Assembly: GCF_001194135.2 (NCBI RefSeq)
Contig: NC_068993.1
Span: 59,432,935 to 59,496,934 of the forward strand
Direction of reading: 5' to 3'
DNA length: 64,000 bases
Source of the DNA: Octopus bimaculoides
Lineage: Eukaryota
In this document: positions 13,918 to 59,453 of the stretch, piece after piece
Layout of the letters: the number at the start of each line of letters is the position of its first letter
Position numbering within the stretch: the stretch's first letter is position 1
Program-made: the position numbers and the translations under genes
Notes under the pieces: generated by a model
What the model saw: the letters and a program-made list of their open reading frames with translations, nothing else
Database searches by the model: none
What the model was told of the DNA's origin: nothing

Positions 13918-15030
13918 CTATACTGTACAAATACATTTGTGCTTAATTAAACGGTTACTGTGGGAGAAGGAGATACCACAGCTGTCACAATGATATGGTT
14001 TATCCCCAGTATGAATACGTTTATGGACAGTTAAAGCAGTACTTTGGGAGAAGGATTTACCACAGATATCACACTGATATGGTTTTTCTCCAGTATGAAT
14101 ACGCTTGTGTCTCTGTAACTCAGGATTTCGATAAAATGCTTTACCACAGATATCACAATGAAATCGTTTTTCTCCAGTATGAATGCGTTTATGAGCAGTC
14201 AAGCCACTATTTCGTGGGAATGATTTACCACAGATATCACATCTATATGGTTTCTCTCCTGTATGAACATGTTTGTGAATAGTTAACTCATCATTTCGAG
14301 AGAATGATTTGTCACAGACATCACAGCAATAGGGCGTTTCCCCAGTATGAATACGTTTGTGTCTAGTTAATTGATAATTTAGATTGAATGATCTACCACA
14401 GAAATCACACTGATATGTTTTTTCTCCAGTATGAATGCGTTTGTGAGCAGTCAAGTCACTATTCCGAGGGAATGATTTACCACAGAAATCACACCAATAT
14501 GGTTTCTCTCCTGAATGAACATGCTTGTGAGCAGTTAACTGATCATTTCGTGGGAATGTTTTATCACAGATATTACAGTGATAGGGCTTTTCTCCCGTAT
14601 GAACACGTTTGTGTTTAGTTAGCTGATTACTTTGATTGAATGATCTACCACAGAAATCACAATGATATGGTTTTTCTCCAGTATGAATGCGTTTGTGATC
14701 AGCTAAGTTAGAACGTTTAGAGAAGGATTTAGTACACATATCACACCGATATGGTTTCTCTCCTGTGTGAATACGCCAGTGTTCTGTAAAAATATCTTTA
14801 CGAATGAAAGCTTGACCACAGATTTCACATCGATATGGTTTCTCTCCTGTATGGTGACGTTTATGAATAAGTAGCTCATCAGTTCGAGAGAAGGGTCTAC
14901 CACAGATATCACAGTGATATGGTTTCTCTCCCGTATGAATACGCCTATGAGTTGTCAGAAGACTTTTTGTAGTCAATGATTTTTCACAAATATCACACTG
15001 ATACAAAGTATTTCCTGAGTTTTTCGCCAT
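13918..15030 (-). CDS. C2H2 zinc-finger protein ZNF-1 (370 aa, 13 fingers, last is C2HC)
   Basis: Uninterrupted ORF of 28-aa CxxC…HxxxH repeats with TGEKPY linkers; no effector domain. Confidence 0.95.
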
Positions 15031-15283
15031 TTCTTCGGAACAAAAAGAAAACCAAAATCAATCTTTTAACTCATTTCACCATCATTTTCCTTCTTTCTCC
15101 ACAATATATGGATATTTCACCTGCTTTTCTTTTTATAATTTATATGTAACAAATATTCTTTAAAATATATTTCCATCACCTCTGACCTTTACAAATATCT
15201 GAAGATGTTGAAAAATCCTTTATAGATATATCCATTTAGAATGCAGAATTATCTTGTTTTTTTTTTTCCAGACAGTGACTTAC

Positions 15284-15456
15284 ACAAATATTTCCTAATA
15301 ATCTTGCCTAGAATCAAAGAAATTCCCCATAATTTTCCTGACTATATAAATATTATTACATTTATTCTGTATAACATCCTTTGTCTTCAAAACATTATAA
15401 ATATTGATGATGCTTCTGATGTAAAATAATTTAATGATACCAATTTCATCAAGGAC
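15284..15456 (-). other. Predicted non-coding exon 2 of ZNF-1
   Basis: Conserved acceptor tcatttcAG|gtcc and donor atttgt|GTAAGT; the 251-nt intron ends at ccgaAG two nt before the ATG. Homologous elements occur in the other units. Confidence 0.6.
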
Positions 15457-15947
15457 CTGAAATGATAGAGAAACAGAATAAGATATAAAGAATAATTAAA
15501 CTGTAGAGAATCACCAAAAATTCACATTTCTATGGTGATAAATTGTAGAATACAACTCAACTTATCCAGATTATCACATTATTTCAAACATAACAGAGCA
15601 GAGACATGCATATAATAGAGATACATATTATATCATGCCACAGAAAAGAAATGTCTCCTTGTCTTGACATTGTTTGATCGTTGGAAGCAAGTATCACCAT
15701 CAAGCAAAAAACATCATTTGTTTCTAGTTTTCCATAAATACATCTCTGACCAACAAACATCATTACTTTACTGGGAAACATGAGGATTGGTGACAGAAAG
15801 GGTCAGGTAAAAAATCCGTCCAATGTATAATGTCTATACAAGCATGGAAAGGAGAACATTAAAATGAAGAAATGAAGACATATTCGATATATAGAAAAGG
15901 AGTAGGTAGGAATTGTATCCAGTGTATTGCAGGGATGGGGGAAGGGG

Positions 15948-15995
<48 letters not shown>

Positions 15996-16289
15996 TTAAA
16001 GAAAGAAATGAAATACTGAAAACGGCAGAGTTTCGAAATAGCAATCAGTTTTATTAGCAATCAAAACAACAATCAGCACGATTAGCAATCGAGAAGGAAA
16101 AGGACACTCAGTTAGGTGTTGAAATATTAGAAAAAAGGAAAAAATTCTGAAACCTGTGGATAAAACTTTTTTCTGTATCGTAATTCAAAGAATTGGGAGA
16201 CTTTTCAATTAGTATTCTTGTGTTTTCCCGAAGAGATATTCCGAAAATCTGTTTTTTAAATATTGTAAATAGTTTAAGCATGATAAATA

Positions 16290-18353: not shown

Positions 18354-19214
18354 CTATACTGTACAAATACATTTGTGCTTAATTAAACGGTTACTGTGGG
18401 AGAAGAATTTACCACAGCTTTCACAATGATATGGTTTTTCTTTAGTATGAATACGTTTATGGACAGTTACAGCAGTACTTTGGGAGAAGGATTTACCACA
18501 GATATTACACTGATATGGTTTTTCGCCAGTATGAATACGTTTGTGTCCCTTTAACACATTACTTTGATTAAATGCTTTACCACAGATATCACAATGAAAT
18601 CGTTTTTCTCCAGTATGAATGCGTTTATGAGCAGTCAAGCCACTATTTCGTGGGAATGATTTACCACAGAAATCACACCAATATGGTTTCTCTCCTGTAT
18701 GAACATGTTTGTGAATAGTTAACTCATCATTTCGAGAGAATGATTTGTCACAGATATCACAGTGAAAAGGTTTTTCTCCTGTATGAATACGTTTGTGTTT
18801 AATTAACTGGTTATTTTGATTGAATGATCTACCACAAAAATCACAATGATATGGTTTTTCTCCAGTATGAATGCGTTTGTGATCAGTTAAGTTAGTACTT
18901 TTAGAGAATGATTTACTGCACATATCACACTGATATGGTTTCTCTCCTGTGTGAATACGTCTGTGTGTAGTTAAAATATCTCTACGAGTGAAAGATTGAC
19001 CACAGATATCACATTCATATGGTTTCTCTCCTGTATGGACACGTTTGTGAATAGTTAGCTCATCAGTTCGAGAGAATGGTCTACCACAGATATCACAGTG
19101 ATATGGTTTCTGTCCCGTATGAATACGTATATGAGTTGTAAGATGACCTTTTGTAGTGAATGATTTTTCACAAATATCACACTGACATAAAGACTTTGCT
19201 AAGTTTTTTGCCAT
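18354..19214 (-). CDS. C2H2 zinc-finger protein ZNF-2 (286 aa, 10 fingers)
   Basis: Intact ORF with TGEKPY-linked fingers; C-terminus nearly identical to ZNF-1. Confidence 0.95.
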   Translation of the reverse strand: MAKNLAKSLCQCDICEKSFTTKGHLTTHIRIHTGQKPYHCDICGRPFSRTDELTIHKRVHTGEKPYECDICGQSFTRRDILTTHRRIHTGEKPYQCDMCSKSFSKSTNLTDHKRIHTGEKPYHCDFCGRSFNQNNQLIKHKRIHTGEKPFHCDICDKSFSRNDELTIHKHVHTGEKPYWCDFCGKSFPRNSGLTAHKRIHTGEKRFHCDICGKAFNQSNVLKGHKRIHTGEKPYQCNICGKSFSQSTAVTVHKRIHTKEKPYHCESCGKFFSHSNRLIKHKCICTV

Positions 19215-20170: not shown

Positions 20171-20343
20171 CTTCAATACCGCCTGCTCGTGTGATCCCAT
20201 TAAAATTGTTCACAGACTTCTTATTGCAGAATTCATAGTAGAATTAGAAGAGAAATTCCATGCAATGATGTAAAGCTTTGAATCGAAAAACCTCCAGCTG
20301 AATTTAGCGAAGATCAAAGTCTTAGTAAATATAAAGAATATAA

Positions 20344-21215: not shown

Positions 21216-21261
<46 letters not shown>

Positions 21262-22790: not shown

Positions 22791-23649
22791 GACTGTAAAA
22801 GTTTGTGCAAAGGTTTGAAATAACGTTGATTCAAAATTGAAACAGATAATATTTAATATAAAACACTGTCAAAACTTTGAAGAAAATGGTAAAAATCAAA
22901 TTAGAAAATGTGCAACCTTCATCATACATAGATCAAGTTAGTGAATTCTATGCGTAATTTAGAGCTAAAATTAGTAAAAGACTTGATTGGATGTTCCAAA
23001 TATAAAAGAAGAGAAAAATGATTTAAGAGTAAACAAGTTTTATTTAGATTTCAAATCCTTACAAATATCCACAAAGATTGGTGCAGCCAGAACTCTGAAA
23101 TTTGAGATTTTCACTTGAAATGACAAAATGCATGAGATAATGTGGTCCACCACATTGTAGCACTGACAATGGCCATAAAAACATTGTTGGGGTTAATTCA
23201 AAGATTACTCCACACATTTTGTATTTAAGTAAAGTTTAATATTACAATGATACTTGCAAATTAAAATTTAGTTCTGCAAAAAAGTCATTAAGGAATCATA
23301 TTATAAATAAAATTATAGATATTACCAACAACAGAGTTAGTCCCTTGAGGGAATAAATACAAGAATACACCTGAATGCACATACTATACATATCAAAATA
23401 GATATACAATCCATTTATCTTGTTATAATGATGAAATACTGTAGCTTATGGCTTGTATATACTTATTTAGCATCACACATTGATATGAATATAAACATAT
23501 ATAATACTTTTTAGATGATTACTACAAATATCAGTGACCTGGTTTGTCTCCTTTCAAAATACAAACGTGACTGGTTGAGAGAATGACATAGTTTTATACA
23601 TTTGTGCTTAGTCAACTGATTACTGTGAGAGAATGATTTACCACAGTTG

Positions 23650-24438
23650 TCACAGTGATATTTCTCTGGTATGAACACGTTTATGTACAGTTACAGCAGT
23701 ACTTTTGGAAAAGGATTTACCACAGATATCACAATGATAGGGTTTTTCTCCAGTATGAATACGTTTATGTCCCTTTAAGATGTAACTTTGATTAAATGCT
23801 TTACCACAAATATCACAATGAAATGGTCTTTCTCCAGTGTGAGTGCGCTTGTGGGTAGTTAACTGATAATTTCGAGGGTATGATTTACCACAGGTATCAC
23901 ACTGATATGGGTTCTCACCTGTATGAATGTGTTTGTGGGCAATTAATTCAGCATTTCGAGAGAATGATTTGTCACAGATATCACAGTGATAGGGCTTTTC
24001 TCCTGTATGAATGCGTTTGTGCTTAATTAACTGGTTATTTTGATTGAATGATTTACCACAGAAATCACATTGGTATGGTTTTTCTCCAGTATGAATGCGT
24101 TTGTGATCAGTTAAGTTAGTACTTTTAGCGAATGACTTACTGCACATATCACACTGATATGGTTTCTCTCCTGTGTGAATACGTCTGTGTGTAGTTAAAA
24201 TATCTTTACGAGTGAATGATTGACCACAAATATCACATTCATATGGTTTCTCTCCTGTATGGACACGTTTGTGAATAGTTAGCTCACCAGTTCGAGAGAA
24301 TGCTTTACCACAGATATCACAGTGATATGGTTTCTCTCCTGTATGAATACGTACATGAGTAGTAAGATGACCTTTCGTAGTCAATGACTTTTCACAAATA
24401 TCACACTGATACAAAGTCTTTCCTGAGTTTTTTGCCAT
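23650..24438 (-). CDS. C2H2 zinc-finger protein ZNF-3 (262 aa from the MAK start, 9 fingers; 10th lost to frameshift)
   Basis: The paralogous start MAKNSGK is at 24438; the upstream in-frame codon at 24459 is probably not used. An out-of-frame vestigial finger [19 protein letters not shown] follows the stop. Confidence 0.92.
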
Positions 24439-26485: not shown

Positions 26486-27017
26486 CAAAACACTCATTTT
26501 TTTTTTTTTTTCTAATTGGCATTTCATCATCATATAATGGAATGCCAATTAAGATGATGGAACTGGCATTCCATCATCATCTGAAAAGAGATAAATTTTG
26601 TTCAAACTTGGGAAATAATAAATGAAAATTGTACAGGAAGAAAAGAGCTACAAATAAACAAGAAAACATTATGATAAAAATATTTTTCATGTTAATTGAA
26701 AGAATACAGGAAAGAAATGAACAAATTTATCCAACAACTTAATAGTATGATGAAATACTGTATTTTATTTGTTTCTTTTTATTATTATTTAGGGTCACAA
26801 TTGTTTATCAATGCAAAGAGTTAAGAGATTTTTTTAGTCTCCCACCTCTCAGAACGAAGTTCTTTCTCTCATGTAAACTTACAGACGTGAATAGCCAAAT
26901 TATCAGATGGAGAGAAAGATTTACCACAGATATTACAGTAATATGATTTTTCCCCATGTGAAAACATTTGTGCTTAGCTAATAGCTTAATGTAGGAGAAT
27001 GATTTTCCACAGATATA

Positions 27018-28313
27018 TCATGGATATGGCTTTTCTCCTGTATGAATACGTTTGTGAACAGTTACAGTAGCACTTTGGGAAAAAGATTTACCACAGATAT
27101 CACAATGATATGGCTTTTCTCTAGTATGAACACGTTTGTGAACAGTTACAGCAGTATGTTGAGAGAATGCTTTACCACAGATATCACAATGATATGGTTT
27201 TTCTCCTGTATGAATGCGTAGATGGCTTACCAAGGAATTACGTATAGTAAACGATTTACCACAGATATCACAATGATATGGTTTTTCTCCAGTATGAATA
27301 CGTTTGTGATCAGTCAATGAATGATTTGTGGACAATGCTTTACCACAGATATCACAATGATATAGTTTTTCTCCAGTATGAATACGTTTGTGATCAGTCA
27401 AGGTCTTACTTTGAGAGAATGATTTACCACAGACATCACAATGATATGGTTTTTCACCAGTATGAATATTTTTATGTCTTCTTAAATCGTTACTACGAAT
27501 AAACGCTTTATTACAGATATCACAATGATATGGTTTTTCTCCGGTGTGAATACGTTTGTGACCAGTTAAGGAAATATTGTGTAAGAATGCTTTACCACAG
27601 ATATCACAATTAAATCGTTTTTCTTGAGTATGAATGCGTTTGTGTCCAGCTAAGTTAGTACTTCGAGAAAATGATTTACCACAGATATCACAATGAAATG
27701 GTTTTTCTCCAGTGTGAGTACGTTTATGTCCAGTCAAGGCACTATTTTGAAGGAATGATCTACCACAGATATCACATTGATAAGGTTTTTCTCCTGTATG
27801 AACATATTTGTGAGCAGTTAACTCATCATTTCGAGAGAATGATTTGTCACAGATATTACAGTGATATGGCTTTTCTCCTGTATGAATACGCTTGTGTTTA
27901 ATTAGCTGATTGCTTTGATTGAATGATTTACTACAGAAATCGCACTTAAATGGTTTTTCTCCAGTATGAATGCGTTTGTGATCGGTCAGGTTAGTACTAT
28001 TGGGAAATGACTTACTACACATATCACACTGGTAAGGTTTCTCTCCTGTGTGAATACGTTTGTGTATAGTTAAAACATCATTACGAGTGAAGGATCTGCC
28101 ACAGATATCACACTGATATGGTTTCTCTCCTGTATGAACACGAACATGAATTGTTAAGTCACTATTTCGATAGAAAGATTTACCACAGATACTACAGTGA
28201 TATGGTTTCTCCCCTGTATGAAGACGTATATGAATAGTTAGATAATATTTTGAAGCAAACGACTTTTTACAGATATCACATTCATATGAAGATTTTGCTA
28301 ATTTTTTCGCCAT
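27018..28313 (-). CDS. C2H2 zinc-finger protein ZNF-4 (431 aa, 15 fingers; two vestigial fingers after the stop)
   Basis: Intact ORF; TGA sits at the first-Cys position of finger 16. Confidence 0.95.
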   Translation of the reverse strand: MAKKLAKSSYECDICKKSFASKYYLTIHIRLHTGEKPYHCSICGKSFYRNSDLTIHVRVHTGEKPYQCDICGRSFTRNDVLTIHKRIHTGEKPYQCDMCSKSFPNSTNLTDHKRIHTGEKPFKCDFCSKSFNQSNQLIKHKRIHTGEKPYHCNICDKSFSRNDELTAHKYVHTGEKPYQCDICGRSFLQNSALTGHKRTHTGEKPFHCDICGKSFSRSTNLAGHKRIHTQEKRFNCDICGKAFLHNISLTGHKRIHTGEKPYHCDICNKAFIRSNDLRRHKNIHTGEKPYHCDVCGKSFSQSKTLTDHKRIHTGEKLYHCDICGKALSTNHSLTDHKRIHTGEKPYHCDICGKSFTIRNSLVSHLRIHTGEKPYHCDICGKAFSQHTAVTVHKRVHTREKPYHCDICGKSFSQSATVTVHKRIHTGEKPYP

Positions 28314-33029: not shown

Positions 33030-34472
33030 TCATGTAAGCTTACAGATGTGAACAGCTAAATCACCAGGTTGAGAGAAGGATTTAGCACAGATATTGCAGT
33101 AATATAGTTTTTCCCCCATATGAATACATTTGTGCTTAGTTAATAGCTTACTGTAGGAGAATGATTTTCCACAGATCTCACAATGATATGGTTTTTCTCC
33201 AGTATGAATACGCTTGTGAACAGTTACAGCAGTACTTTGGGAGAAGGATTTACCACAGATATCACAAAATGGATTTTCTTCAGTATGAATGCGCTTGTGC
33301 TCAGCTAAGGAATTACTTCGCGAGAATGATTTACCACACACATCACAATGAAATGGTTTGTCTCCGGTATGAATGCGTTTGTGATCAGTCAAGGAATTAC
33401 TTCGAGAAAATGATTTACCACAGATATCACAATTATATGGCTTCTCTCCTGTATGAATACGTTTATGTACAGTTACAGCAGTACTTTGAGAGAATGATTT
33501 ACCACAGATGTCACAATGATATGGTTTTTCTCCAGTATGAATACGTTTATGACCACTCAAGGAATTATTTCTAGAGAATGATTTACCACAGATATCACAC
33601 TGATATGGTGTTTCTCCAGTATGAATACGTTTGTGATAAGTTAAAGCATTACTCTGTGTGAACGATTTACCACAGATATCACAATGATATGGTTTTTCTC
33701 CAGAATGAATGTTTTTATGTCCCTTTAAATCTTTACTTCGAATGAATGATTTACCACAGATATCACAGCGATATGGTCTTTCTCTGGTATGAATAAGTTT
33801 GTGTATTGTCACAGCAGTACTCTGTGAGAATGCTTTCCCACAAACATCACAATGAAATCGTTTTTCTCCAGTATGAATACGCTTGTGTCCAGTCAAGGCA
33901 CTATTTTGAAGGAATGATTTACCACAGATATCACATTGATATGGTTTTTCTCCTGTATGAACGTGTTTGTGAGCAGTTAACTCATCGTTTCGAGAGAATG
34001 ATTTGTCACAGACATCACAGTGATAAGGTTTTTCTCCTGTATGAATACGTTTGTGTTTAATTAGCTGATTGCTTTGATTGAATGATTTACCACAGAAATC
34101 ACAATGATATGGCTTTTCTCCAGTATGAATGCGTTTATGATCAGTTAAGTTAGTACTTCTGGAGAATGATTTACTGCACATATCACATTGATATGGTTTC
34201 TCTCCTGTGTGAATACGTTTGTGTGTAGTTAAAATATCTTTACGGGTGAATGATTGACCACAGATATCACATTGATATGGTTTCTCTCCTGTATGAACAC
34301 GTTTATGAATAGTTAACTCACCACTTCGATAGAAAGTTTTGCTACAGACACCACAGTGATATGGTCTCTCTCCTGTATGAATACGTATGTGAGAAGTTAG
34401 ATTACCTTTTGAAGCTAAAGACTTTTTACATATACTGCACTCATACGAAGCTTTGTCTAAGGTTTTTGCCAT
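33030..34472 (-). CDS. C2H2 zinc-finger protein ZNF-5 (480 aa, 17 fingers; longest member)
   Basis: Intact ORF including the two terminal fingers that are lost in ZNF-4 and ZNF-9. Confidence 0.95.
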   Translation of the reverse strand: MAKTLDKASYECSICKKSLASKGNLTSHIRIHTGERPYHCGVCSKTFYRSGELTIHKRVHTGEKPYQCDICGQSFTRKDILTTHKRIHTGEKPYQCDMCSKSFSRSTNLTDHKRIHTGEKPYHCDFCGKSFNQSNQLIKHKRIHTGEKPYHCDVCDKSFSRNDELTAHKHVHTGEKPYQCDICGKSFLQNSALTGHKRIHTGEKRFHCDVCGKAFSQSTAVTIHKLIHTRERPYRCDICGKSFIRSKDLKGHKNIHSGEKPYHCDICGKSFTQSNALTYHKRIHTGETPYQCDICGKSFSRNNSLSGHKRIHTGEKPYHCDICGKSFSQSTAVTVHKRIHTGEKPYNCDICGKSFSRSNSLTDHKRIHTGDKPFHCDVCGKSFSRSNSLAEHKRIHTEENPFCDICGKSFSQSTAVTVHKRIHTGEKPYHCEICGKSFSYSKLLTKHKCIHMGEKLYYCNICAKSFSQPGDLAVHICKLT

Positions 34473-36041
34473 CTCTTCAGGAAAAAAATATCAATCTTTT
34501 AACTTATATAATAACTTTTCTTTTCTCACCACAAGATATGAATATTTATTTTGTTTTCCTTCCTATGATTTATTTCTAACAAAAATTCTTTGTGCTATAT
34601 ATCTGCTAACTGTGATCTATACTGCAAAGTCCTTTATAAATTAATCTATTTACAATGCAAATTATTATGTACTCATTCCAGACAGAAGTAGGTGTCTTGT
34701 AGTAAATGAGAGACTTGGCGATGTCGGTCAGCAAGGGACAGGTAGGGGAGAGAATGTTGCAAATAATCTCACCCAGAAGAAACCTTTCAGCATAATTCAC
34801 AAGACTTATATAAACATGGTTATATTTGTTCTGCATAACATCGTCCTTGAGTCTTGAAAAGATAGTAAATATTGATGATGTTTCTGATATGAAAACACTT
34901 TTTTTTTTATATGCCAGCTTCAGTAAGGATCCTGAAATAATAAGAAAAGCAGTATAAGATAAAAAGGATAATTTATTTCGTTTCTGTAATGATAAATTGC
35001 AGAAGTGAACCTTGACCAGAACTATATAACAAGTGCTTCAGAATATGGAATATTATGATATGACGAAATATNNNNNNNNNNNNNNNNNNNNNNNNNNNNN
35101 NNNNNNNNNNNNNNNNNNNNNNNNNNNNNNNNNNNNNNNNNNNNNNNNNNNNNNNNNNNNNNNNNNNNNNNNNNNNNNNNNNNNNNNNNNNNNNNNNNNN
35201 NNNNNNNNGGGGGGGGAATTAGCAAAAGCGGTTCATCCGATCTTTGGTTTTAGGTACTAAAAATGCAACAAAGTAACTTCGAGAAGCTTATGAATAAAAT
35301 AATGATCAGATTGCAAAACTTCTATAAACACGTTACAAATTGGTTGTATTGTAAACAGTCTTAATTAGCAATATATATAATAAATAGATCAATAAATAAT
35401 CCGACCTCAAAAACAACAGCAATAATAATATAAACAACACTTGTGTTTATAGTCCCGAGAAGATGACAAGCAAAACCGACTACGACGGAGTTCGAACTCA
35501 GAACATAAAGAGCAAAAAAGAAAACACCGCTAAGCGTCAATTCCTGTCGAGAAACATTTTTAGAAATTTATTAAAAATGCATTTGTAAACATTTAACCGA
35601 AAAACATTAAATTAATATACTTCTAGTTAATTACAGTTAATTAGTAACTTCCAAGCATTTTTACATTCGTTTCGCTTAATCAGAAAACCAATCCTATTTT
35701 TACATTTTCTCTCATATGGCTTAGTTTCAGTTTTACCCCTATGAATTTATAGGACTAAAACCTGAAGATCGTCGCGAATTGCAACTATTTAGCATTGCAG
35801 GATTGTACAAAATGTTGAAAATAGAAGTAAAGAAAAATTCCATTTTATTAATGACGACTATTCCGAAAGTCCTCGCCTCCCCATTTTTTTTTCTTTTCTA
35901 GAATTACTTTTCATACAAAGGAAATCACGATTCTGAGAGAAATTTTAGCGTACTGTCGTAGTATACCAAAATTCTTTACCGTTTTCCTTCTCCATGAGGA
36001 AATAACAATTATTCCGAAACTATTTTATATCCACTACCGAT

Positions 36042-36150
36042 ACTCACTTCTTTTATCTTTGTATTTTCTTTGAGAAATTCTTTTAACATGAGAGAAAGTT
36101 CTTCGCCGGAAATTCTTATGGTAGATGCTGGGCGGAAGTATAAAAATCTT
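36042..36150 (-). promoter_or_regulatory. Predicted promoter / non-coding exon 1 of ZNF-5
   Basis: Minus strand: acttccgccc…atttccggcg…aaaagaa|GTGAGT (donor at 36047). Confidence 0.6.
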
Positions 36151-38089: not shown

Positions 38090-38167
38090 TGCAACTATTT
38101 CCGGCGAAGTTTTTCCTCTCATGTTAATCGACTTTATCAATGATATATAAAAGAAAAAGAAGTAAGT
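38090..38167 (+). promoter_or_regulatory. Predicted promoter / non-coding exon 1 of ZNF-6 (head-to-head with ZNF-5, about 2 kb apart)
   Basis: atttccggcgaag…aaaagaa|GTAAGT (donor at 38162). Confidence 0.6.
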
Positions 38168-39586
38168 ATTTATAGTGTTTAAATTTCCATTTTCTTTTAT
38201 ATTTTTCTTCCACTTGTACATCTCGTGCCTCTAGAACTACAGTGGGTACAATGGACAAAATTCCTACTCACCCTTTCTATACATACCAAGCACGACCATT
38301 CCCTTAATGTGAGCAATCTTTCCTATTTGCTAATACTTTAACCTTTGATAAATTCACTTCGACGTCTCTCGATTCAGGGCTTTGTTTCCATGCTGCCAAT
38401 TTCTTTTCCAATTCTAGTATAGATTCAGATATAAAAAGTCTGTGATTTGTCCATACCAAACTCTGCCAGATATTTTAAGCATGTCAATATGTATTATTAT
38501 TTTGTAACGATTAAAACCTTTATTACTTGAAAGATTTCCTCGTAGTCATCTCCATTCTTTCAGAAACTAGCCCTACATAGTTTCTAAACCTTAGCTTAAA
38601 TCGTTAGTAATTTTGTGAGTACACATTTTTTAATCCAATCTTCCGTCCGGAACATCAACAATTTGTCCATTTCGTGGACACTCCTTGTTGCCCCTTTAAT
38701 TACTGGTCGGTCATAGCTACTAGTGACCATAAATGACGGACAATCTGTATATGTTTATGTACGATATCAAATATATATATTTATTTATGAACTATAATAT
38801 AAATACACGTAGACAACTAAAAGGTTTTTTTTTTCAGGAAGAGCTTACAGCTATACGTTTTTCGTGCCAGTGACATGTAAAAGACACCCAGTACATTATG
38901 TAAAGTAGTTGGTGTTAGGAAGGGCACTTAGCTGTAGAAACCAAGCCAAAAGAGACAACCGGAGCCTAGTGTAGCTCTCTGGTTTACTAACTCTGGTCAA
39001 ACCTAATCCATGCCAACTCAATATGTATTCTCTACTCTGATATGTATACATGTAAAAATGTAGTGATGTGCAGAACTTCAGTTGTTTAGATAAATGTTTA
39101 CTTCTACAATTTAAAGAAATGAAATAAAATTTCTGCTGTAGAATCTCTACTATGTCAGTCTTCTCCATCTCATACAGTTTCTCTTATCTTTTCAGGGTGC
39201 TAGCTCTTGCTGACATTAAAAGTTATTCACATCCTCGGTACTTATCTTTTTGAGACAATGGAAAATGTTATACAGAACGAATGTAACCAGGTTTATGTAA
39301 ACCTGGTGAATTAAGGTGAAATGTATCCCCTGGATGAGATTATTAGCAACATTTGTGTATGTCGCTGTCTAGAATGAGTAGGAGATAATTTTATGTTTTA
39401 AGTGGACTTAAATATATTTATAAAGGACTTTGCTGCATTGATCACAGTTGATGGACACAGCAGAGGGAATATTTGTGAGAAATAAATTATAAAAACAGAA
39501 AATAAGAAACATTCATATATTGTAGAGAGAAGAAAAATGATGATGAAATGAGTTAAAAGATGGATTTTTTTTTTAATCCTTAAGAG

Positions 39587-40327
39587 ATGGCAAAAAATTT
39601 AGGAAAGTCTTTATATGTATGTGATATCTGTAACAAGTCATTCACTAAACAATATCATCTTACTACTCATATACGTATTCATACAGGAGAGAGACCTTAT
39701 CACTGTGATATCTGTGGGAAATCATTCAGTCAAAGTGGTGAGTTAACTATTCACAAACGTCTTCATACAGGAGAGAAGCCATATCATTGTGATATCTGTG
39801 GTCAGTCGTTCATTCGTAAAGATATTTTAACTACACACAGACGTATTCATACAGGAGAGAAACCTTATCACTGTGATATGTGCAGTAAGTCATTTGCTAA
39901 AAGTACTAACTTAACTGATCACAAACGCATTCATACTGGAGAAAAACCATATCATTGTGATTTCTGTGGTAGATCATTCAATCAAAATAATCAGCTAATT
40001 AAGCACAAACGTATTCATACTGGAGAAAAGCCCTATCACTGTGACATCTGTAACAAATCATTCTCTCGAAATGATGAGTTAACTGCACACAAACACATGC
40101 ATACGGGAGAGAAACCATATCAGTGTGATAGCTGTGGTAAATCATTCCCCCGAAATGGTCAGTTAACTGCACACAAACGCATTCATACTGGAGAAAAACG
40201 ATTTCCTTGTGATATCTGTGGTAAAGCTTTCAATCAAAGTAATGTTTTAAAGGGACACAAACGAACTCATTCTGGGAAAAAAGCATTGATAACACTTGAT
40301 ATAAGTGGTAAGTCCTTTTCTCAATAA
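39587..40327 (+). CDS. C2H2 zinc-finger protein ZNF-6 (246 aa, 8 fingers plus a decayed 9th)
   Basis: Intact fingers 1-8; the 9th lacks both Cys and ends at a stop. Confidence 0.93.
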   Translation: MAKNLGKSLYVCDICNKSFTKQYHLTTHIRIHTGERPYHCDICGKSFSQSGELTIHKRLHTGEKPYHCDICGQSFIRKDILTTHRRIHTGEKPYHCDMCSKSFAKSTNLTDHKRIHTGEKPYHCDFCGRSFNQNNQLIKHKRIHTGEKPYHCDICNKSFSRNDELTAHKHMHTGEKPYQCDSCGKSFPRNGQLTAHKRIHTGEKRFPCDICGKAFNQSNVLKGHKRTHSGKKALITLDISGKSFSQ

Positions 40328-43809: not shown

Positions 43810-45507
43810 ATTTATAGTATTCAAAACTACATAAAATATTTTCAAGCGGAGTTTCGGAATACCACATCGAGAAGAAAAGGGGGCAAAGAATTGGAAGGCG
43901 ATTCTTTTTGGCATTCCTGTATTTCAGACTGCGGAAATTACGATTCTGGAAGAAGTTTCATTTTAATTTCAGTTTATAGATATATATATATACGTTTTCT
44001 TTTTTATTTACCCCTTCCCTCAATTTTCTTCCCCATGCAGTACTGTTAGCTATTCTGAAACTCCAGCATTCTCAATATTTCATTTCATTTTTGAAATTTT
44101 AACTCTGTAGATTTCTTTTCCATCCATAGCTACACCTCGTACACCGCACAGAAATCGCACCCACTCATTTTCTATATTCTCTGGTAATTATATCGATGGG
44201 AATAGGGTTTTCTATTTACTCATACATTAATTTTTGTTAACTTCATTCTAATGTCTGTCGATTGTTTCCATGCTTGAAAGGGAATAGAGTATCAGAATAA
44301 GCGGGTACCCCTTAGCAGCTGGCCTTAAAGTTTTTTGTTAGGGCTTAGAGAACTATAATGAACAGAAACTGAAGAGAGAGTCCTGGTGCACTCCCATCTG
44401 AATTCATAGCTATACTCTTTTGTTAAATCTTATTTTGCTGACTTTATCCCTATACATCGTTTGTGTAGCTCTCACAAGGCATTATTCATCTATTCCAAAT
44501 GTCTTCGATGTTCACCAGACCACAACTATGAACCCTAGGTATAGGGACTAATTCATGGCTAGATACTTCTCAGTTTTGTCACTACAAGACAGTATTAGTA
44601 CTTCGTTGATACAATTCCAAAGTGCATTGCGTTTATGTTTAGTTTCTTGCTAGAATTCTTTCTGTAATCTTCATTGCGTAATCCAACAGTTTATTAAATG
44701 AAAGATTCCCCCGTGGTCATCTTTTTCTTTCAATGTCAGGAAATGTTTCTAGTCCTATTTTGAATTGGTAGTAGTTTTATGGGTAAACATTTTTTTTTTT
44801 ATCTGATCATCCATTTAGAACCCAAACTATTTCACCATTTCCTGGATAGTCCATATTACTTTTTGCTATTATTATTGCCTCTATGTCGGCCATAGCATTC
44901 AGTGGGACAACTGTAAATTATGTGATCCTATTTACAATTTTTAAACAACGATGAACATCATGACGATATGTATATCTCTGCTCTGTTATGTCTGATATAA
45001 TGTTGTGATACTTTGGATAGATTCAGTTATATTCTGCACCTTATCACCATAGAAATATAAATTTTTTGTTGTTCACGCTGTACTGTTTAACTATTCTTTA
45101 CATCTTATTCTGTTTCTCTATCATTTCAGGTCCTTGATGAAACTGGTATCAAAATATTATTTTACATCAGAAGCATCATCAATATTTATCAGCTTTTAAA
45201 GATAAAGGAAGATTCTATATAAGAAATATGATACTTGTATAAATCTGAGGAAGTATGGCAAATTTTTTCAGTCTCTGTCTGGAAGGTCACTGTCTGGAAT
45301 GAGAAAAAAATTCTGCATTCTAAATAAATATATTTATAAATTACTTTACATCATCTTCAGATATTGGTAAAGACTGCAGTTGATGGGAATATAATTGAAG
45401 GAATACTTGTTAAAAATAATTTATAAAAAGAAAAGCAAGTGTGGAGAAATAAGAAAAATGATAATAAAATGAGTTAGAAGATTGATTTACATTTTTATCC
45501 TTCAGAA

Positions 45508-46449
45508 ATGGCCAAAAAATTAGGAAAGTCTTCATATGAATGTGATATCTGTAAAAAGTTATTCACTACAAAAGGTCATCTTACTACTCATATACGTATA
45601 CATACAGGAGAGAAACCATATCACTGTGATATCTGTGGTAGATCATTCTCTCGAACTGATGAATTAACCACTCACAAACGTGTTCATACAGGAGAGAAAC
45701 CATATAAATGTGATATCTGTGGTCAATCATTTACACGTAGAGATATTTTAACCACACACAGACGTATTCACACAGGAGAGAAACCATATCAGTGTGATAT
45801 GTGTAGTAAATCATTCTCCAAACGTAATAATTTAGCTGATCATAAACGCATTCATACTGGAGAAAAACCATATCAGTGTGATTTTTGTGGTAGATCATTC
45901 AATCAAAATAATCAGCTAATTAAACACAAACGTATTCATACAGGAGAAAAGCCCTATCACTGTGATGTCTGTGACAAATCATTCTCTCGAAATGATAAGC
46001 TAACTGCTCACAAACACATTCATACAGGAGAGAAACCATATCAGTGTGATACCTGTGGTAAATCATTCCCTCGAAATAGTGCCTTAACTGATCATAAACG
46101 CATTCATACTGGAGAAAAACGATTCCATTGTGGTGTTTGTGGTAAAGCATTTGTTCAAAGTAATGTTTTAAAGGGACATATTCGCATTCATACAGGAGAA
46201 AAACCGTATCCTTGTGATATCTGTGGTAAAGCATTTGCTCAGAGTACTGATGTAACTGTTCACAAACGTATTCACACTAAAGAAAAGCCATATCATTGTG
46301 ATATTTGTGGTAAAGCATTCTCTCGCAGAAATTATCTAGCTAAGCACAAAAGTATTCATACAGCTTCAAGACTGCATCACTGTAATATCTGTGATAAATC
46401 ATTCCCTCAGCATGATGATTTAACTAATCACACATGTATTCCTACATGA
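45508..46449 (+). CDS. C2H2 zinc-finger protein ZNF-7 (313 aa, 11 fingers)
   Basis: Intact ORF; tandem paralogue of ZNF-8. Confidence 0.95.
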
Positions 46450-50103: not shown

Positions 50104-50357
50104 TTGGCACTCTGTTGCGTACGTCATCGAGGGTTCCAGTTGATCCGATCAACGGAACACCCTGCTCATAAAATTAACGTGCAAATGGTTGAGCACTCCA
50201 CAGACATGTGTACCCTTCAGATAGTTCTCAGGGATTTCCAGTGTGACAAGGCTGACCATTTTGAAATACAGGTACAACAGAAATAGGAAGTAAGAGTGAG
50301 AGAATCTGGGAATCGAAACCACGATCCTATGACTGCGAGTCCACTGCCCTAACCACT
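50104..50357 (-). mobile_element. tRNA-head SINE (family of 25688-26036)
   Basis: Reverse complement of the 25.7 kb copy with an internal deletion. Confidence 0.75.
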
Positions 50358-53164: not shown

Positions 53165-54106
53165 ATGGCCAAAAAAGTAGGAAAGTCTTCACATGAATGT
53201 GATATCTGTGGAAAGTTATTCACTACAAAGGATCATCTTACTACTCATACACGAATACATACAGGAGTGAAACCATATCAATGCGACATCTGTGGTAGAT
53301 CATTCTCACGAACTACTGAATTAACCACTCACAAACGTGTTCATACAGGAGAGAAACCATATAAATGTGATATCTGTGGTCAGTCATTTACACGTAGAGA
53401 TGTTTTAACCAGACACAGACGTATTCACACAGGAGAGAAACCATATCAGTGTGATATGTGTAGTAAATCATTCCCCAATAGTACTAACCTGACTGCTCAC
53501 AAACGCATTCATACTGGAGAAAAACCATATCATTGTGATTTCTGTGGTAGATCATTCACCCAAAATAACCAGCTAACTAAACACAAACGTATTCATACAG
53601 GAGAAAAGCCCTATCAATGTGATATGTGTGACAAATCATTCTCTCGAAATGATAATCTAACTGCTCACAGACACATTCATACAGGAGAGAAGCCATATTG
53701 GTGTGATATCTGTGGTAAATCATTCCCTCGAAATAGTGCCTTAATTGATCATAAATGCATTCATACCGGAGAAAAACGATTCCATTGTGACGTGTGTGGT
53801 AAAGCATTTGTTCAAAGTAATCTTTTAAAGGGACATATACGCATTCATACTGGGGAAAAACCGTATCATTGTGATGTCTGTGGTAAATCGTTTGCAAAAA
53901 GTACTGCCGTAACTCTACACAAACATATTCACACTAAAGAAAAGCCATATCATTGTGATATTTGTGGTAAAGCATTCTCTCGCAGAAATTATCTAGCTAA
54001 GCACAAAAGTATTCATACAGCTTCAAGACTGCATCACTGTAATATCTGTGATAAATCATTCCCTCAGCATGATGATTTAACTAATCACACATGTATTCCT
54101 ACATGA
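53165..54106 (+). CDS. C2H2 zinc-finger protein ZNF-8 (313 aa, 11 fingers)
   Basis: Intact ORF; last two fingers are identical to ZNF-7. Confidence 0.95.
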
Positions 54107-56413: not shown

Positions 56414-57508
56414 TTTTATAGTGTTTTAAATCTACATAAAAACATTTTCAAGGCGGGGTTTCGGAATAACTGTTGTTTCCCAATGAGGTAAGGACAGGGT
56501 GAAGAATTTTAATATTCTACGATTTTCCGCCAAAATTTGTATCAGAATCGTAATTTCCTTTGCATCAAATAATAATTTTAGAAGAAAAAAATGAGCAGTA
56601 GCTGTCACTAACAAAATAGTTTTTCTTTCAGGGGTTTTTATCGGCATTTTAAAAAATTATTTTCGACATTTTATGGAATCCCGCATTATTAAACAGTTGT
56701 AAATCGCTACAGTCTTTTGGTTTTTAGGTCTGTAAATTCGTGGGACTAAAATCGAAGCTGGACAATATGAGCGAAAATACAAAAATAGTCTTGGGATTTC
56801 CCGACAAAGCGAAACATATATGAAATACTTGACAAACAGAAATACATTAATTTAATGTTCTTTCGATCAAATGTTTACAAATATATTTTTGGTAATCTTC
56901 CAGTTTCGAGGGGTAAAAGAAATATTCAAGGGAAATAACTGAACGACTTAACAGTATTATCCGTATTGCTTTTTCTCTAAAACAGCATGCGACGGAATTT
57001 TTTTTTTATGAAAGTTTAAAATGTTTTTTTCTTTTTCCAAAACGGAAAATAAGATGTTGTGCAGCCGGTCTTCCACGAGGCATTTTCGACTTCTCATAAG
57101 AAACTATGATATTCAATCACCTGTGTGATTTATATATAAGCAGTTAACGTCATCAAATCACGTGATTTATTTATAAACAAAGTAATACGGATAATACTGG
57201 TAAGACGTCGGTTATTTCCCTTGTAATTTATTTACTTTTTTAACCCTCGAAACTGGAAGATTATCCCGAGTTCGAATTCCGCTGAGGTCAATTTTCCCTG
57301 TCATCCTCTCGGGTCGATTAAGTGCTAATAGCACAGTACTTGATTCGATGCAATTAACTTGGGGCCCTCCTCGAAATTTGCTGATTCTGCACCGAAACTT
57401 AAATGAATTAATATTATTATTGCTGTTCTTTTTGAGGTCGGTTTATTGGCGGAAGTTAAGGACATAGACTGCACCCACCTTTCGGTAATTTTTTTTTNNN
57501 NNNNNNNA

Positions 57509-57706
57509 TGTTTAGCGGTATTTCATCTACTGTTACGTTCTGAGTTCAAACTCCGCCGAGGTCGACTTTGCCTTTCATCCTTTCGGGGGTCGATAAATTA
57601 AGTACCAGTTACGCACTGGGGTCGATGTAATCGACTTAATCCCTTTGTCTGTCCTTGTTTGTCCCCTCTATGTTTAAGCCCCCTGTGGGCAATAAAGAAA
57701 TAAGAA
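57509..57706 (+). mobile_element. CORE-like SINE
   Basis: gagttcaaactccgccgaggtcgactttgcctttcatcctttcggggtcgataaattaagtaccag… Partial copies at 57265-57400, 35420-35540 (-), 12395-12485 (-), 40590-40660 (-). Confidence 0.7.
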
Positions 57707-57767
57707 ACGAAATAAATTTCCACAATTAAATTATCCTCTATATCTTGTACTGTTTTTCTTATTTCAG

Positions 57768-57947
57768 GATCCTTACCGAAACTGGCATAAAAAAAAAGTG
57801 TTTTTATATCTGAAGCATTGTTAATATTCCCCATCTTTTCAAGACTCAAGGATGATGTTATGCAGAACAAATATAACCATGTTTATATAAAGTCTTGTGA
57901 ATTATGGAGAAAGGTTTCTTCTGGGTGAGATTATTTGCAACATTTGT
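57768..57947 (+). other. Predicted non-coding exon 2 of ZNF-9
   Basis: atttcAG|gatcc acceptor, catttgt|GTAATT donor, and an acceptor ctgaAG two nt before the ATG at 58158. Confidence 0.55.
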
Positions 57948-58157
57948 GTAATTCACTGTCTGGAATGAGTACAAAATACTTTTGCATTGTGTAAAGATAA
58001 ATCTATAAAGGATTTTGCAGAGTCGATGGACCTACAGCAGAAGGAATATTTGTTAGCAATAAATTGCAGAAAGGAAAGCAAAAGGCATATTCATATGATG
58101 TGGTGAAAGAAGGAAAATTGTTGTTTGTTTAAAATATTAATTCTTTATCCTGAAGAG

Positions 58158-59453
58158 ATGGCAAAAGATTTAGCAAAATCTTCATATGAGTGTGATATCT
58201 GTAACAAGTCATTCACTAAACAATGTCAACTAACTACTCATATACGTATTCATACAGGAGAAAAACTACATTACTGTGATTTCTGTGGTAAAGCATACAT
58301 TCGAAATGATGAGTTAACTATTCACAAACGTATTCATACAGGAGAGAGGCCATATTACTGTGATGTCTGTGGTAAGACTTTTTATCGAAGTGGTGAGTTA
58401 ACTATTCATGTACGTGTTCATACAGGAGAGAAACCATATCAGTGTGATATCTGTGGCAAATCCTTCACTCGTACAGATATTTTAACTACACACAAACGTA
58501 TTCACACAGGAGAGAAACCATATCAGTGTGATATGTGCAGTAAATCATTCCCCAATAGTACTAACCTGACTGATCACAAACGCATTCATACTGGAGAAAA
58601 GCCATATCACTGTGATTTCTGTGGTAAATCATTCAATCAAAGCAATCAGCTAATTAAACACAAACGTATTCATACAGGAGAAAAGCCTTTTCACTGTGAT
58701 GTATGTGATAAATCATTCTCTCGAAACGATGAGTTAACTGCTCACAAATATGTTCATACAGGAGAAAAACCTTATCAATGTGATATCTGTGGTAAATCAT
58801 TCCTTCAAAATAGTGCCTTGACTGGACACAAGCGTATTCATACTGGAGAAAAACGATATATTTGTGATGTTTGTGGTAAAGCATTTCCTCGAAGTAATAA
58901 CTTAACTGCACACAAACGTATTCATACCAAAGAAAAACCATTTCATTGTGGTGTGTGTGGTAAATCATTTTCACACAGTAATTCCTTAACTGATCACACA
59001 CGTATTCATACTGGAGAGAGACCTTATCACTGTGATGTCTGTGGTAAAACATTCCCTCGAAGTAATTCTTTGAGTGATCACAAGCGCATTCATACTGGAG
59101 AAAAACCATATCATTGTGAAATTTGTGGTAAAACATTTATTCGGAGTAATGAGTTAAAGGTCCATAAACGTATTCACACAGGAGAAACACCATATCATTG
59201 TGATGTCTGTGGTAAATCATTCTCTCAAAATAATTCCTTGACTAATCACAAACGCATTCATACTGGGGAAAAACCATATGATTGTGATATCTGTGGTAAA
59301 TCATTCTCTAGAAATAATTCCTTGGCTGACCACAAACGCGTTCATACTGGAGAAAAACCATATCAATGTAATGTCTGTGGTAAATCATTCTCTCAGCATG
59401 CTGCTGTAGCCGTACATAAACGTGTTCATGCCAGAGAAAAGCCACAGCATTGA
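58158..59453 (+). CDS. C2H2 zinc-finger protein ZNF-9 (431 aa from the MAK start, 15 fingers; two vestigial fingers after the stop)
   Basis: Paralogous start MAKDLAK at 58158; TGA sits at the first Cys of finger 16. Confidence 0.95.
   Translation: MAKDLAKSSYECDICNKSFTKQCQLTTHIRIHTGEKLHYCDFCGKAYIRNDELTIHKRIHTGERPYYCDVCGKTFYRSGELTIHVRVHTGEKPYQCDICGKSFTRTDILTTHKRIHTGEKPYQCDMCSKSFPNSTNLTDHKRIHTGEKPYHCDFCGKSFNQSNQLIKHKRIHTGEKPFHCDVCDKSFSRNDELTAHKYVHTGEKPYQCDICGKSFLQNSALTGHKRIHTGEKRYICDVCGKAFPRSNNLTAHKRIHTKEKPFHCGVCGKSFSHSNSLTDHTRIHTGERPYHCDVCGKTFPRSNSLSDHKRIHTGEKPYHCEICGKTFIRSNELKVHKRIHTGETPYHCDVCGKSFSQNNSLTNHKRIHTGEKPYDCDICGKSFSRNNSLADHKRVHTGEKPYQCNVCGKSFSQHAAVAVHKRVHAREKPQH

What the first reader, a model, noticed from the sequence alone, without database searches (positions are those of the whole stretch)
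13918..59453. Bidirectional array of nine effector-less poly-zinc-finger genes with a fixed central core and variable ends
Seen: five minus-strand then four plus-strand genes diverge from about 36-38 kb and encode 8-17 fingers after a 9-aa leader, with no KRAB, ZAD, BTB or SCAN domain. A positional core of recognition helices recurs in all nine, with substitutions: R[KR]D[IV]LT, [KNR]S[TN]NL, Q[NS]NQL, RND[EQKN]L, [RQ]NS[AGD]L. Finger 1 and the fingers after the core vary widely. Known: octopus genomes contain very large tandem C2H2 clusters. Inference: a shared target anchor with variable flanking specificity, possibly tracking the young TEs that fill the locus.
Basis: partly seen in the sequence, partly recalled or inferred. 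Interest (0 to 1): 0.7.

Follow-up and report, generated by a model that had tools for sequence, protein, structure and literature searches.

The report
Tandem cluster of nine zinc-finger genes
This is an ordinary, locally duplicated family of nine DNA-binding zinc-finger genes, probably from an octopus, whose middle fingers are kept more constant than the rest; it is a clean example of a known kind of gene cluster, not a new kind of system.

Summary
Nine intact ORFs lie at 13918-59453, five on the minus strand and then four on the plus strand. Each has a 9-aa leader and 8-17 Krüppel-type C2H2 fingers, and Pfam finds nothing else in them. All N gaps are intergenic.

Fingers F3-F6 are positional orthologues in all nine genes. 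Synonymous divergence is the same in the core and the flanking fingers (dS about 0.37). Recognition-helix dN in the core is about half that of the flanks (0.156 vs 0.300, p about 0.01). The F5 contact residues (QNQK) occur in all nine genes. The "fixed core" is only relative, because contact residues are still the fastest-evolving class even there.

The "variable ends" follow three subfamilies. They arose by register-shifted unequal crossover (Z1, Z9), patchy gene conversion, C-terminal finger amplification, and nonsense or frameshift truncation (Z3, Z4, Z6, Z9). Most gene pairs show purifying selection (omega 0.26-0.37).

TE tracking has no support inside the window, and most repeats here are old fragments. 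The strand switch coincides with an assembly gap, so the divergent layout is not verified. No close orthologue was found in the databases.

Verdict: a new member of a known kind (a cephalopod lineage-specific C2H2 expansion). Interest is modest.

The parts
13918..15030 (-). Z1. 370 aa, 13 fingers, subfamily A1. Recombinant gene: an older F1-F7 joined to a Z2-like F5/6-F10, which gives the internal three-finger repeat.
   Evidence: The 3' half and flank differ from Z2 by 1-3%, while the 5' half differs by 10-16%.
18354..19214 (-). Z2. 286 aa, 10 fingers, subfamily A1. Reference architecture: leader, F1-F8, QSTAVTV finger, terminal [14 protein letters not shown]. The core F3-F6 is about 18699-19013.
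23650..24438 (-). Z3. 262 aa from MAK, 9 fingers, subfamily A1. A frameshift has cut off the terminal finger. About 330 bp are deleted just upstream of the ATG.
23577..23649 (-). Relic, out-of-frame terminal finger of Z3 (..[20 protein letters not shown]..).
27018..28313 (-). Z4. 431 aa, 15 fingers, subfamily B. Ends at a TGA that replaces the first Cys of the penultimate finger.
26848..27017 (-). Two relic fingers of Z4 lying after the premature stop. They are homologous to the last two fingers of Z5.
33030..34472 (-). Z5. 480 aa, 16 fingers plus a degenerate C2-H-x-C terminal finger. The full-length subfamily B architecture.
39587..40327 (+). Z6. 246 aa, 8 intact fingers, A-type. F9 is degenerate (both Cys lost) and the rest of the C-terminus is deleted. 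Possibly decaying.
45508..46449 (+). Z7. 313 aa, 10 fingers plus a degenerate terminal finger, subfamily A2.
53165..54106 (+). Z8. 313 aa, subfamily A2, sister of Z7 (dS 0.15-0.16). Its F4 (NSTNL) is B-type, which indicates a gene-conversion patch.
58158..59453 (+). Z9. 431 aa, 15 fingers, subfamily B. A Z6-like leader, F1 and F2 are fused to a B-type F2 onward, which adds one finger. It has the same TGA truncation as Z4.
59454..59546 (+). Decayed relic fingers of Z9 lying after the premature stop.
34473..39586 (.). Spacer between the divergently oriented Z5 and Z6. It holds repeat fragments and gap 35072-35208. There is no shared promoter-like homology beyond each gene's own upstream block of about 0.4 kb.
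44966..45507 (+). Example of the conserved 5' flank that is duplicated with every gene. Homology runs about 0.35-0.6 kb upstream of each ATG. It ends in a pyrimidine tract plus AG 2-3 nt before the invariant ATG in 8 of 9 copies. It is either a promoter/5'UTR or a 5'UTR intron acceptor.
22798..23649 (-). Ungapped 3' flank of Z3. It is homologous to the gapped 3' flanks of Z1 (13079-13917) and Z2 (17567-18353), and so is part of the duplication unit.

Best explanation
WHAT IT IS. A birth-and-death cluster of nine paralogous Krüppel-type C2H2 poly-zinc-finger genes, most likely from an octopod genome. Each gene is a single coding exon: a 9-aa MAK leader, then 8-17 fingers mostly joined by TGEKP-type linkers, then a stop. 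All nine descend from one ancestral gene of about 10-11 fingers.

HOW IT AROSE (shown). The family grew by local duplication of units of at least 2.5-3.5 kb, each comprising a 5' flank, the gene and a 3' flank. It was then remodelled in four ways:
- Register-shifted unequal crossover between finger repeats: Z1 gained 3 fingers and Z9 gained 1.
- Patchy gene conversion.
- Amplification of C-terminal fingers in one subfamily (Z4, Z5, Z9).
- Nonsense, frameshift or deletion truncation of the C-terminus (Z3, Z4, Z6, Z9).

SELECTION (shown). The proteins have been under purifying selection. Fingers F3-F6 are the most constrained, and the F5 contact residues are kept in every copy.

HOW IT WORKS (inferred). 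The proteins are sequence-specific DNA binders. F3-F6 read a common anchor of about 12 bp. The diverging F1, F2, F7 and later fingers shift or extend specificity from paralogue to paralogue. Without a recognisable effector domain they would act by occupancy or architecture, or through partners bound by the fingers themselves.
For: - Nine intact ORFs with only C2H2 Pfam families. No other zinc-finger loci in the window.
- 76 of 96 linkers are TGEKP-like.
- F1-F7 are positional orthologues, and F3-F6 form single clusters across all nine genes.
- Homologous 5' and 3' flanks travel with the genes.
- Z9.2 groups with Z6.2 while Z9.3 groups with Z5.2.
- Z1.9 and Z1.10 are 2% from Z2.6 and Z2.7, and the 3' flank is 99% identical, while F1-F5 differ by 10-16%.
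- Z8 F4 is closest to the B-type F4.
- Z4 and Z9 share the same TGT-to-TGA change. Relic fingers lie downstream of the stops.
- Pairwise omega is 0.26-0.37 with Fisher p of 2e-4 or less for five of six pairs.
- Core against flank: equal dS. Helix dN is 0.156 vs 0.300 (p=0.012) and framework dN is 0.057 vs 0.140.
- Non-overlapping-pair contrasts give p 0.008-0.05.
- QNQK is present in all nine genes.
- The closest named relative of a LINE fragment in the window is an Octopus bimaculoides protein, at 92% identity.
Against: - No expression, binding or 5'-end data exist for these genes.
- An upstream coding exon cannot be strictly excluded, because a pyrimidine tract plus AG sits 2-3 nt before the ATG.
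- The core-against-flank contrast is less than two-fold and rests on 35 against 21 helix codons. Recombination among copies violates the single-tree assumption.
- Contact residues in the core still evolve with omega about 0.8 (wide CI), so the 'anchor' may be F4-F6 or only F5.
- No close orthologue was found in public proteomes, so conservation across species is untested.
- Z6 and Z3 may be decaying copies. Z1-Z2 omega is 0.66 (p=0.08).
Confidence: 0.6

Rival explanations
1. TE-tracking arms race. The shared anchor recognises a conserved part of a transposon family, and the variable fingers follow its diverging subfamilies. This would be an effector-less invertebrate analogue of KRAB-ZFP/TE co-evolution.
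For: Published genome-wide prediction finds that octopus ZNF motifs are enriched in TE consensus sequences (PMC10547256). The question is described as open for cephalopods (PMC12513265). Contact residues of the flanking fingers evolve fast (omega about 2, CI 0.8-7.6). The single exact match to the crude core prediction, CGGAACAG, lies in a SINE-like repeat with three copies in the window.
Against: There is no enrichment of the predicted core in the window: 4 hits against 1.67 expected, with 6 of 100 shuffles reaching 4, and 1 hit against 0.68 expected for the 8-mer. The prediction method is very inaccurate: only 5% of predicted human KZNF motifs match the ChIP-exo motifs. Repeats in the locus are mostly old fragments at 75-89% identity. 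No silencing domain is present. The omega above 1 is not significant.
Confidence: 0.2
2. The central fingers are conserved for a role other than base-specific DNA reading, for example protein-protein contacts, RNA binding or array folding. On this reading there is no common DNA anchor.
For: The framework residues of the core fingers, and not only the helices, are more conserved than those of flanking fingers (dN 0.057 vs 0.140). A run of 62-69 identical nucleotides spans the F4 linker and the start of F5 between distant paralogues. No effector domain exists, so some fingers may have to recruit partners.
Against: The core fingers have canonical DNA-reading signatures (R at -1 with D at 2 in F3 and F6, N at 3 in F4) and canonical TGEKP linkers. 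The strongest constraint is on the contact positions of F5.
Confidence: 0.12
3. There is no special core. The pattern is history plus noise in a young, recombining family. The centre of the array is simply least affected by the unequal crossovers and truncations that remodel the ends.
For: Structural changes do concentrate at the ends: an N-terminal finger insertion in Z9 and C-terminal amplification or truncation elsewhere. Mosaic gene conversion is evident. The statistical support is moderate (p 0.008-0.05).
Against: Substitution rates were compared only among positionally orthologous fingers with equal dS (0.37 vs 0.37), so neither relatedness nor homogenisation explains the lower dN. The F5 contact codons show saturated synonymous differences with an unchanged amino-acid signature.
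Confidence: 0.08

Closest known systems
Lineage-specific tandem C2H2 zinc-finger expansions of coleoid cephalopods (Albertin et al. 2015; Holzinger et al. 2025, PMC12513265; chromosome clusters in Amphioctopus and O. sinensis, PMC9795677)
   Same: Multi-finger Krüppel-type genes sit in local clusters, embedded in repeat-rich DNA. The paralogue divergence (dS 0.15-0.6) fits the reported octopus-specific bursts. A TE fragment in the window is 92% identical to an O. bimaculoides sequence.
   Different: No protein with these recognition helices was found in the O. bimaculoides, O. vulgaris or O. sinensis proteomes held in the database. Neither the species nor the expansion cluster could be assigned. 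Expression in nervous tissue, the hallmark reported for these expansions, was not testable.
Vertebrate KRAB zinc-finger gene clusters (for example human chr19)
   Same: Tandem birth-and-death evolution. The finger array lies in one exon. Paralogues differ by finger gain or loss and by fast change at positions -1, 2, 3 and 6, while the framework is under purifying selection. (The comparison rests on my own knowledge of the KZFP literature.)
   Different: There is no KRAB or any other effector domain, only a 9-aa leader. TE targeting is not shown.
CTCF-type 'core plus flanking fingers' binding mode
   Same: Functional analogy only. A central block of fingers would read a constant core motif, and the outer fingers would add variable contacts. 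(From my own knowledge of CTCF ZF3-7.)
   Different: In CTCF one protein uses this mode at different sites. Here the variation would be between paralogues. There is no sequence relationship and no binding data.
Effector-less poly-ZNF proteins of other animals (for example the OZF/ZNF146-like and 'gastrula zinc finger' proteins that dominated the database hits)
   Same: Proteins made almost entirely of fingers. Identity is 45-59% over the arrays, driven by the shared framework.
   Different: The resemblance lies in the generic framework and linkers only. The recognition helices are unrelated.

Membership tests
Krüppel-type C2H2 poly-zinc-finger proteins | Tandem C-x2-C-x12-H-x3-H fingers with a 28-aa period | tested here: met
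   109 fingers parsed. Pfam zf-C2H2 and zf-H2C2_2 E-values range from 1e-46 to 1e-139. TRF finds an 84-bp period.
Krüppel-type C2H2 poly-zinc-finger proteins | Conserved TGEKP-type inter-finger linkers | tested here: met
   76 of 96 linkers match T[GKRQ]E[KRN]P.
KRAB-ZFP, SCAN-ZFP, BTB-ZF and ZAD-ZNF | An N-terminal KRAB, SCAN, BTB or ZAD domain in the same protein | tested here: not met
   No such Pfam hit in any of the nine ORFs. Only 9 residues precede finger 1. None was found in the 20 largest intergenic ORFs. A short upstream coding exon is not strictly excluded.
Cephalopod lineage-specific C2H2 expansion | Paralogues clustered in tandem in a coleoid genome | tested here: inconclusive
   Clustering is met, with nine paralogues in 46 kb. 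The coleoid origin is only inferred, from a LINE fragment 92% identical to an O. bimaculoides entry and from base composition.
Cephalopod lineage-specific C2H2 expansion | Expression centred on nervous and embryonic tissue (PMC12513265) | not testable with these tools
   No transcript data are available. The exact proteins are absent from the protein collection.
TE-targeting ZNF (KZFP-like function) | The binding motif is enriched in a transposon family | tested here: inconclusive
   A crude recognition-code motif is not enriched in the window. No species TE library or measured motif was available.
Functional protein-coding genes (as opposed to pseudogenes) | Intact ORF and dN/dS significantly below 1 | tested here: met
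   All nine ORFs are open. Omega is 0.26-0.37 with p of 2e-4 or less in five of six pairs. Exceptions: Z1-Z2 omega is 0.66 (p=0.08), and the C-termini of Z3, Z4, Z6 and Z9 are truncated.

The most novel reading that the evidence does not exclude
The nine paralogues form an effector-less invertebrate counterpart of the KRAB-ZFP system. A four-finger anchor (F3-F6) held by purifying selection would recognise a conserved segment of one repeat family. One candidate is the SINE-like element that carries the only CGGAACAG in the window. Register-shift recombination and fast contact-residue change in the outer fingers would generate variants that follow the subfamilies of that repeat.
Probability: 0.12. 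Interest if true: 0.6.

Novelty: new member of a known kind. Interest (0 to 1): 0.3.

Why it matters
Large C2H2 expansions are one of the signature features of octopus genomes, and what they bind is an open question (PMC12513265). This locus is compact and nearly gap-free within the genes, and the whole history of nine paralogues can be read from it: duplication, register-shifted crossover, conversion, finger amplification and truncation. Four central fingers are demonstrably more constrained than their neighbours. That makes it a convenient test set. Nine natural variants share F3-F6 and differ elsewhere, so binding assays could ask whether such families share an anchor motif and whether that motif lies in repeats. 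In itself the locus adds no new principle.

Tried and rejected
1. Full-length homologue search with Z2 and a profile search of F1-F7 against 1.84 billion representatives. Both were swamped by generic or giant poly-ZNF proteins and gave no information on orthologues.
2. Exact look-up of all nine proteins: none is in the collection.
3. A query with framework and linkers masked to X, so that only the recognition helices seed the search. There were 106 candidates. The best octopus hits (O. vulgaris XP_036371110, O. sinensis ZNF436-like) have unrelated helices, so no close orthologue is on record.
4. Search for effector domains or TE proteins in the 20 largest intergenic ORFs. It found only two RVT_1 fragments and one HTH/DUF4817 fragment.
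5. Recognition-code motif for F3-F7 (RNCGGAACAGNNG and CGGAACAG) scanned in the window: not enriched.
6. Idea that each gene is a mobile cassette: no terminal inverted repeats around the ungapped Z3 unit. Rejected.
7. Idea that core conservation is caused by gene-conversion homogenisation: rejected, because dS in the core equals dS in the flanks.
8. Rfam and tRNA scans: nothing found.
9. Albertin 2015 could not be read, because PMC4795812 is not held.
10. Continuity across gap 35072-35208 could not be shown. No paralogous flank bridges it.

Full report
WHAT IS THERE

The window has low GC (about 0.25-0.40). Between 13.9 and 59.5 kb it holds nine open reading frames that consist almost entirely of C2H2 zinc fingers:

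- Z1 13918-15030 (-), 370 aa, 13 fingers
- Z2 18354-19214 (-), 286 aa, 10 fingers
- Z3 23650-24438 (-), 262 aa counted from MAK, 9 fingers
- Z4 27018-28313 (-), 431 aa, 15 fingers
- Z5 33030-34472 (-), 480 aa, 16 fingers plus a degenerate terminal one
- Z6 39587-40327 (+), 246 aa, 8 fingers
- Z7 45508-46449 (+), 313 aa, 10 plus 1 degenerate
- Z8 53165-54106 (+), 313 aa, 10 plus 1 degenerate
- Z9 58158-59453 (+), 431 aa, 15 fingers

tblastn with all nine proteins finds these nine loci and nothing else in the 64 kb. TRF reports the expected 84-bp period in each. Every protein begins M-A-K, and nine residues precede the first finger. Pfam reports only C2H2-type families, with no KRAB, SCAN, BTB or ZAD. 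76 of 96 inter-finger linkers are TGEKP-like.

ASSEMBLY GAPS

All eight N runs are intergenic, so no reading frame depends on a gap. Order and orientation do depend on scaffolding. Only Z3-Z4-Z5 and Z6-Z7 share ungapped sequence. The change from minus-strand to plus-strand genes falls exactly across gap 35072-35208, and no paralogous flank bridges that gap. The 'bidirectional' layout should be treated as unverified.

The picture is better for the gaps 3' of Z1 (13444-13609) and Z2 (17928-18054). The ungapped 3' flank of Z3 aligns collinearly to both sides of each gap, with about 215 bp opposite the Ns. Those joins are therefore sound. Several gaps sit next to (TA)n runs or inside near-identical LINE fragments, which explains why they failed to assemble.

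FAMILY STRUCTURE

Pairwise nucleotide distances between all 109 finger units show that F1-F7 are positional orthologues. Clustering at 17% divergence gives one class per position for F3, F4, F5 and F6 across all nine genes. The only exception is the diverged F3 of Z1. F7 splits into an A-type (RNSxL) and a B-type (QNSAL).

The genes fall into three C-terminal types:

- A1 (Z1, Z2, Z3, and Z6 in part): ends ..[28 protein letters not shown].
- A2 (Z7, Z8): ends ..RRNYLAK plus a degenerate QHDDL..HTCIPT* finger.
- B (Z4, Z5, Z9): seven to nine extra fingers built from repeated RSNSL-like and QSTAVTV-like units, ending YSKLLTK plus a degenerate QPGDL..HICKLT*.

The 'variable ends' are thus mostly differences between subfamilies, not free variation.

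About 0.35-0.6 kb of 5' flank and 0.3-0.9 kb of 3' flank are homologous between copies. For Z7/Z8, homology runs for more than 2 kb upstream. The duplication unit is therefore a gene with its flanks. No terminal inverted repeats surround the ungapped Z3 unit, which argues against a mobile cassette.

HOW THE COPIES WERE REMODELLED

- Z9 carries one extra finger. Its F1-F2 group with Z6 F1-F2 and its F3 groups with Z5 F2. It is therefore a register-shifted recombinant between an A-type and a B-type gene.
- Z1 carries F5-F7 twice. Its second copy, its last fingers and its 3' flank differ from Z2 by only 1-3%, and the flank is 99.2% identical. Its F1-F5 differ from Z2 by 10-16%. This is again an unequal crossover, here shifted by three fingers.
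- Z8 is the sister of Z7, but its F4 is B-type: 3% from Z9 against 16% from Z7. Z5 and Z9 have two identical fingers while other fingers differ by 10-25%. Both observations indicate patchy gene conversion.
- Z3 lost its terminal finger to a frameshift. The finger is still readable out of frame at 23577-23649.
- Z4 and Z9 share the same TGT-to-TGA change at the first Cys of the penultimate finger, with relic fingers downstream.
- Z6 has a degenerate F9 and a deleted C-terminus.

SELECTION

Nei-Gojobori estimates on the collinear block give pairwise dS from 0.15 (Z1-Z2, Z7-Z8) to about 0.6. Omega is 0.26-0.37, with Fisher p of 2e-4 or less, in five of six comparisons. Z1-Z2 is the exception at 0.66 (p=0.08). 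The copies have therefore evolved as protein-coding genes for most of their history. This speaks indirectly against the 'not expressed' refutation, but it does not replace transcript data.

| Class | F3-F7 (core) | F1, F2, F8 (flanks) |
|---|---|---|
| dS (helix codons) | 0.37 | 0.37 |
| helix dN (positions -1 to 6) | 0.156 [0.10-0.22] | 0.300 [0.20-0.42] |
| framework dN | 0.057 | 0.140 |

The helix difference has a codon-permutation p of 0.012. Because dS is equal, neither relatedness nor homogenisation explains the lower dN.

In three alternative sets, each made of four non-overlapping gene pairs, helix residues differ at 20-24% of core sites against 35-36% of flank sites (Fisher p 0.008, 0.053 and 0.011).

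Per finger, whole-finger omega is lowest in F4 (0.15) and F5 (0.13). The F5 contact signature QNQK occurs in every gene, although synonymous differences in those codons are saturated.

The limits are clear. The effect is under two-fold. The contact positions (-1, 2, 3, 6) are the fastest class even in the core (omega about 0.8, CI 0.33-2.3). The apparent omega above 1 at flank contacts (about 2, CI 0.8-7.6) is not significant.

EFFECTOR-LESS?

Nothing but fingers is encoded in the ORFs. The 20 largest intergenic ORFs hold only two reverse-transcriptase fragments and one transposase-type HTH.

In eight of nine copies, a pyrimidine-rich tract followed by AG lies 2-3 nt before the invariant ATG. 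This may be the acceptor of a 5'UTR intron. A short upstream coding exon cannot be excluded from sequence alone. The invariance of M-A-K across copies with dS about 0.4 favours this ATG as the start; that is an inference.

TE TRACKING

Intergenic DNA is made of repeat fragments. Of 67 intra-window repeat pairs of 100 bp or more lying outside the gene units, most are 75-89% identical. Only nine reach 92% or more, and two of those nine belong to the duplication units themselves. 'Young TEs fill the locus' is therefore not accurate.

A hand-made recognition-code motif for F7-F3 (RNCGGAACAGNNG) gives 4 hits at up to one mismatch against 1.67 expected, and 6 of 100 shuffles reach 4. The 8-mer CGGAACAG gives 1 hit against 0.68 expected. 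Neither is enriched. The single exact hit lies in a SINE-like element that has three copies in the window. This is an anecdote, not evidence.

The literature supplies the general hypothesis. Predicted octopus ZNF motifs are enriched in TE consensus sequences, but the prediction accuracy is low (PMC10547256). The cephalopod question is explicitly open (PMC12513265).

ORIGIN AND RELATIVES

The exact proteins are not in the 15-billion-sequence collection. Ordinary and profile searches were swamped by generic poly-ZNFs. A helix-only masked query found no protein with these helices, even though O. bimaculoides, O. vulgaris and O. sinensis entries are in the database. A LINE fragment in the window has an O. 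bimaculoides entry as its best named match, at 92% identity. An octopod source is plausible, but the species and any orthologues remain unknown.

VERDICT

This is a typical lineage-specific tandem C2H2 cluster, of the kind already described for octopus genomes (PMC12513265; PMC9795677). It evolves in the way KRAB-ZNF clusters do, but without an effector domain. The 'shared anchor' reading is modestly supported for F3-F6. TE tracking and the bidirectional layout are unsupported or unverified. The most likely mechanism is sequence-specific DNA binding, with a common F3-F6 sub-site and paralogue-specific flanking contacts. The DNA-binding part is an inference from canonical finger and linker features, not a demonstration.

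Noticed in passing
13079-13439 vs 17567-17927: The distal 3' flanks of Z1 and Z2 are 99.2% identical, while the 5' halves of the genes differ by 10-16%. Both flanks break into an N gap at the same relative position. This means either very recent conversion or crossover, or an assembly problem in a repeated segment.
   Followed up: partly
35072-35208: The only minus-to-plus strand switch in the gene array coincides with an assembly gap. Z5 and Z9, which are paralogues, both have a gap about 600-650 bp upstream of their ATG (35072 and 57498).
   Followed up: partly
20335-20466 vs 48661-48793: Two LINE C-terminal fragments (..RLRWYGHVVRM..) are 97% identical, and each abuts a large gap (20611-21215 and 48794-49561). 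These are the youngest repeat copies in the window. The best named protein hit is an O. bimaculoides entry at 92% identity.
   Followed up: partly
25818-26037 (-), 9377-9596 (+), 50099-50304 (+): A SINE-like element is present in three copies at 83-94% identity. It carries the only exact CGGAACAG in the window, which is the crude predicted site for F4-F6.
   Followed up: partly
7804-8391 (-): An open frame of 196 aa, of which 171 aa follow an ATG. It has weak HTH_32, HTH_Tnp and DUF4817 matches. It is probably the N-terminal part of a mariner/Tc-like transposase.
   Followed up: partly
1-351 (-) and 50383-50718 (-): Fragments of reverse transcriptase (Pfam RVT_1, E-values 2e-12 and 3e-9). These are non-LTR retrotransposon remnants.
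   Followed up: no
24439-24913: Z3 lacks about 330 bp that all the other copies have just upstream of the ATG. It also lacks the AG that precedes the ATG in the other eight. Its 5' end may be impaired.
   Followed up: partly
2949-3335: A 387-bp segment matches its own reverse complement at 94%. It is a long palindrome or a foldback element.
   Followed up: no
nt 328-400 of the coding block (F4 linker to the start of F5), e.g. Z1/Z6/Z8: Runs of 62-69 identical nucleotides occur between otherwise 16-19% divergent paralogues (approximate P of 2e-3 or less). This is either a conversion hotspot or nucleotide-level constraint.
   Followed up: no
28655-29272 (+) and 29849-30391 (+): Two long open frames (206 and 181 aa) lie in a GC-richer, strongly C-skewed stretch upstream of Z4. 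Neither has a Pfam match, and their nature is unknown.
   Followed up: partly
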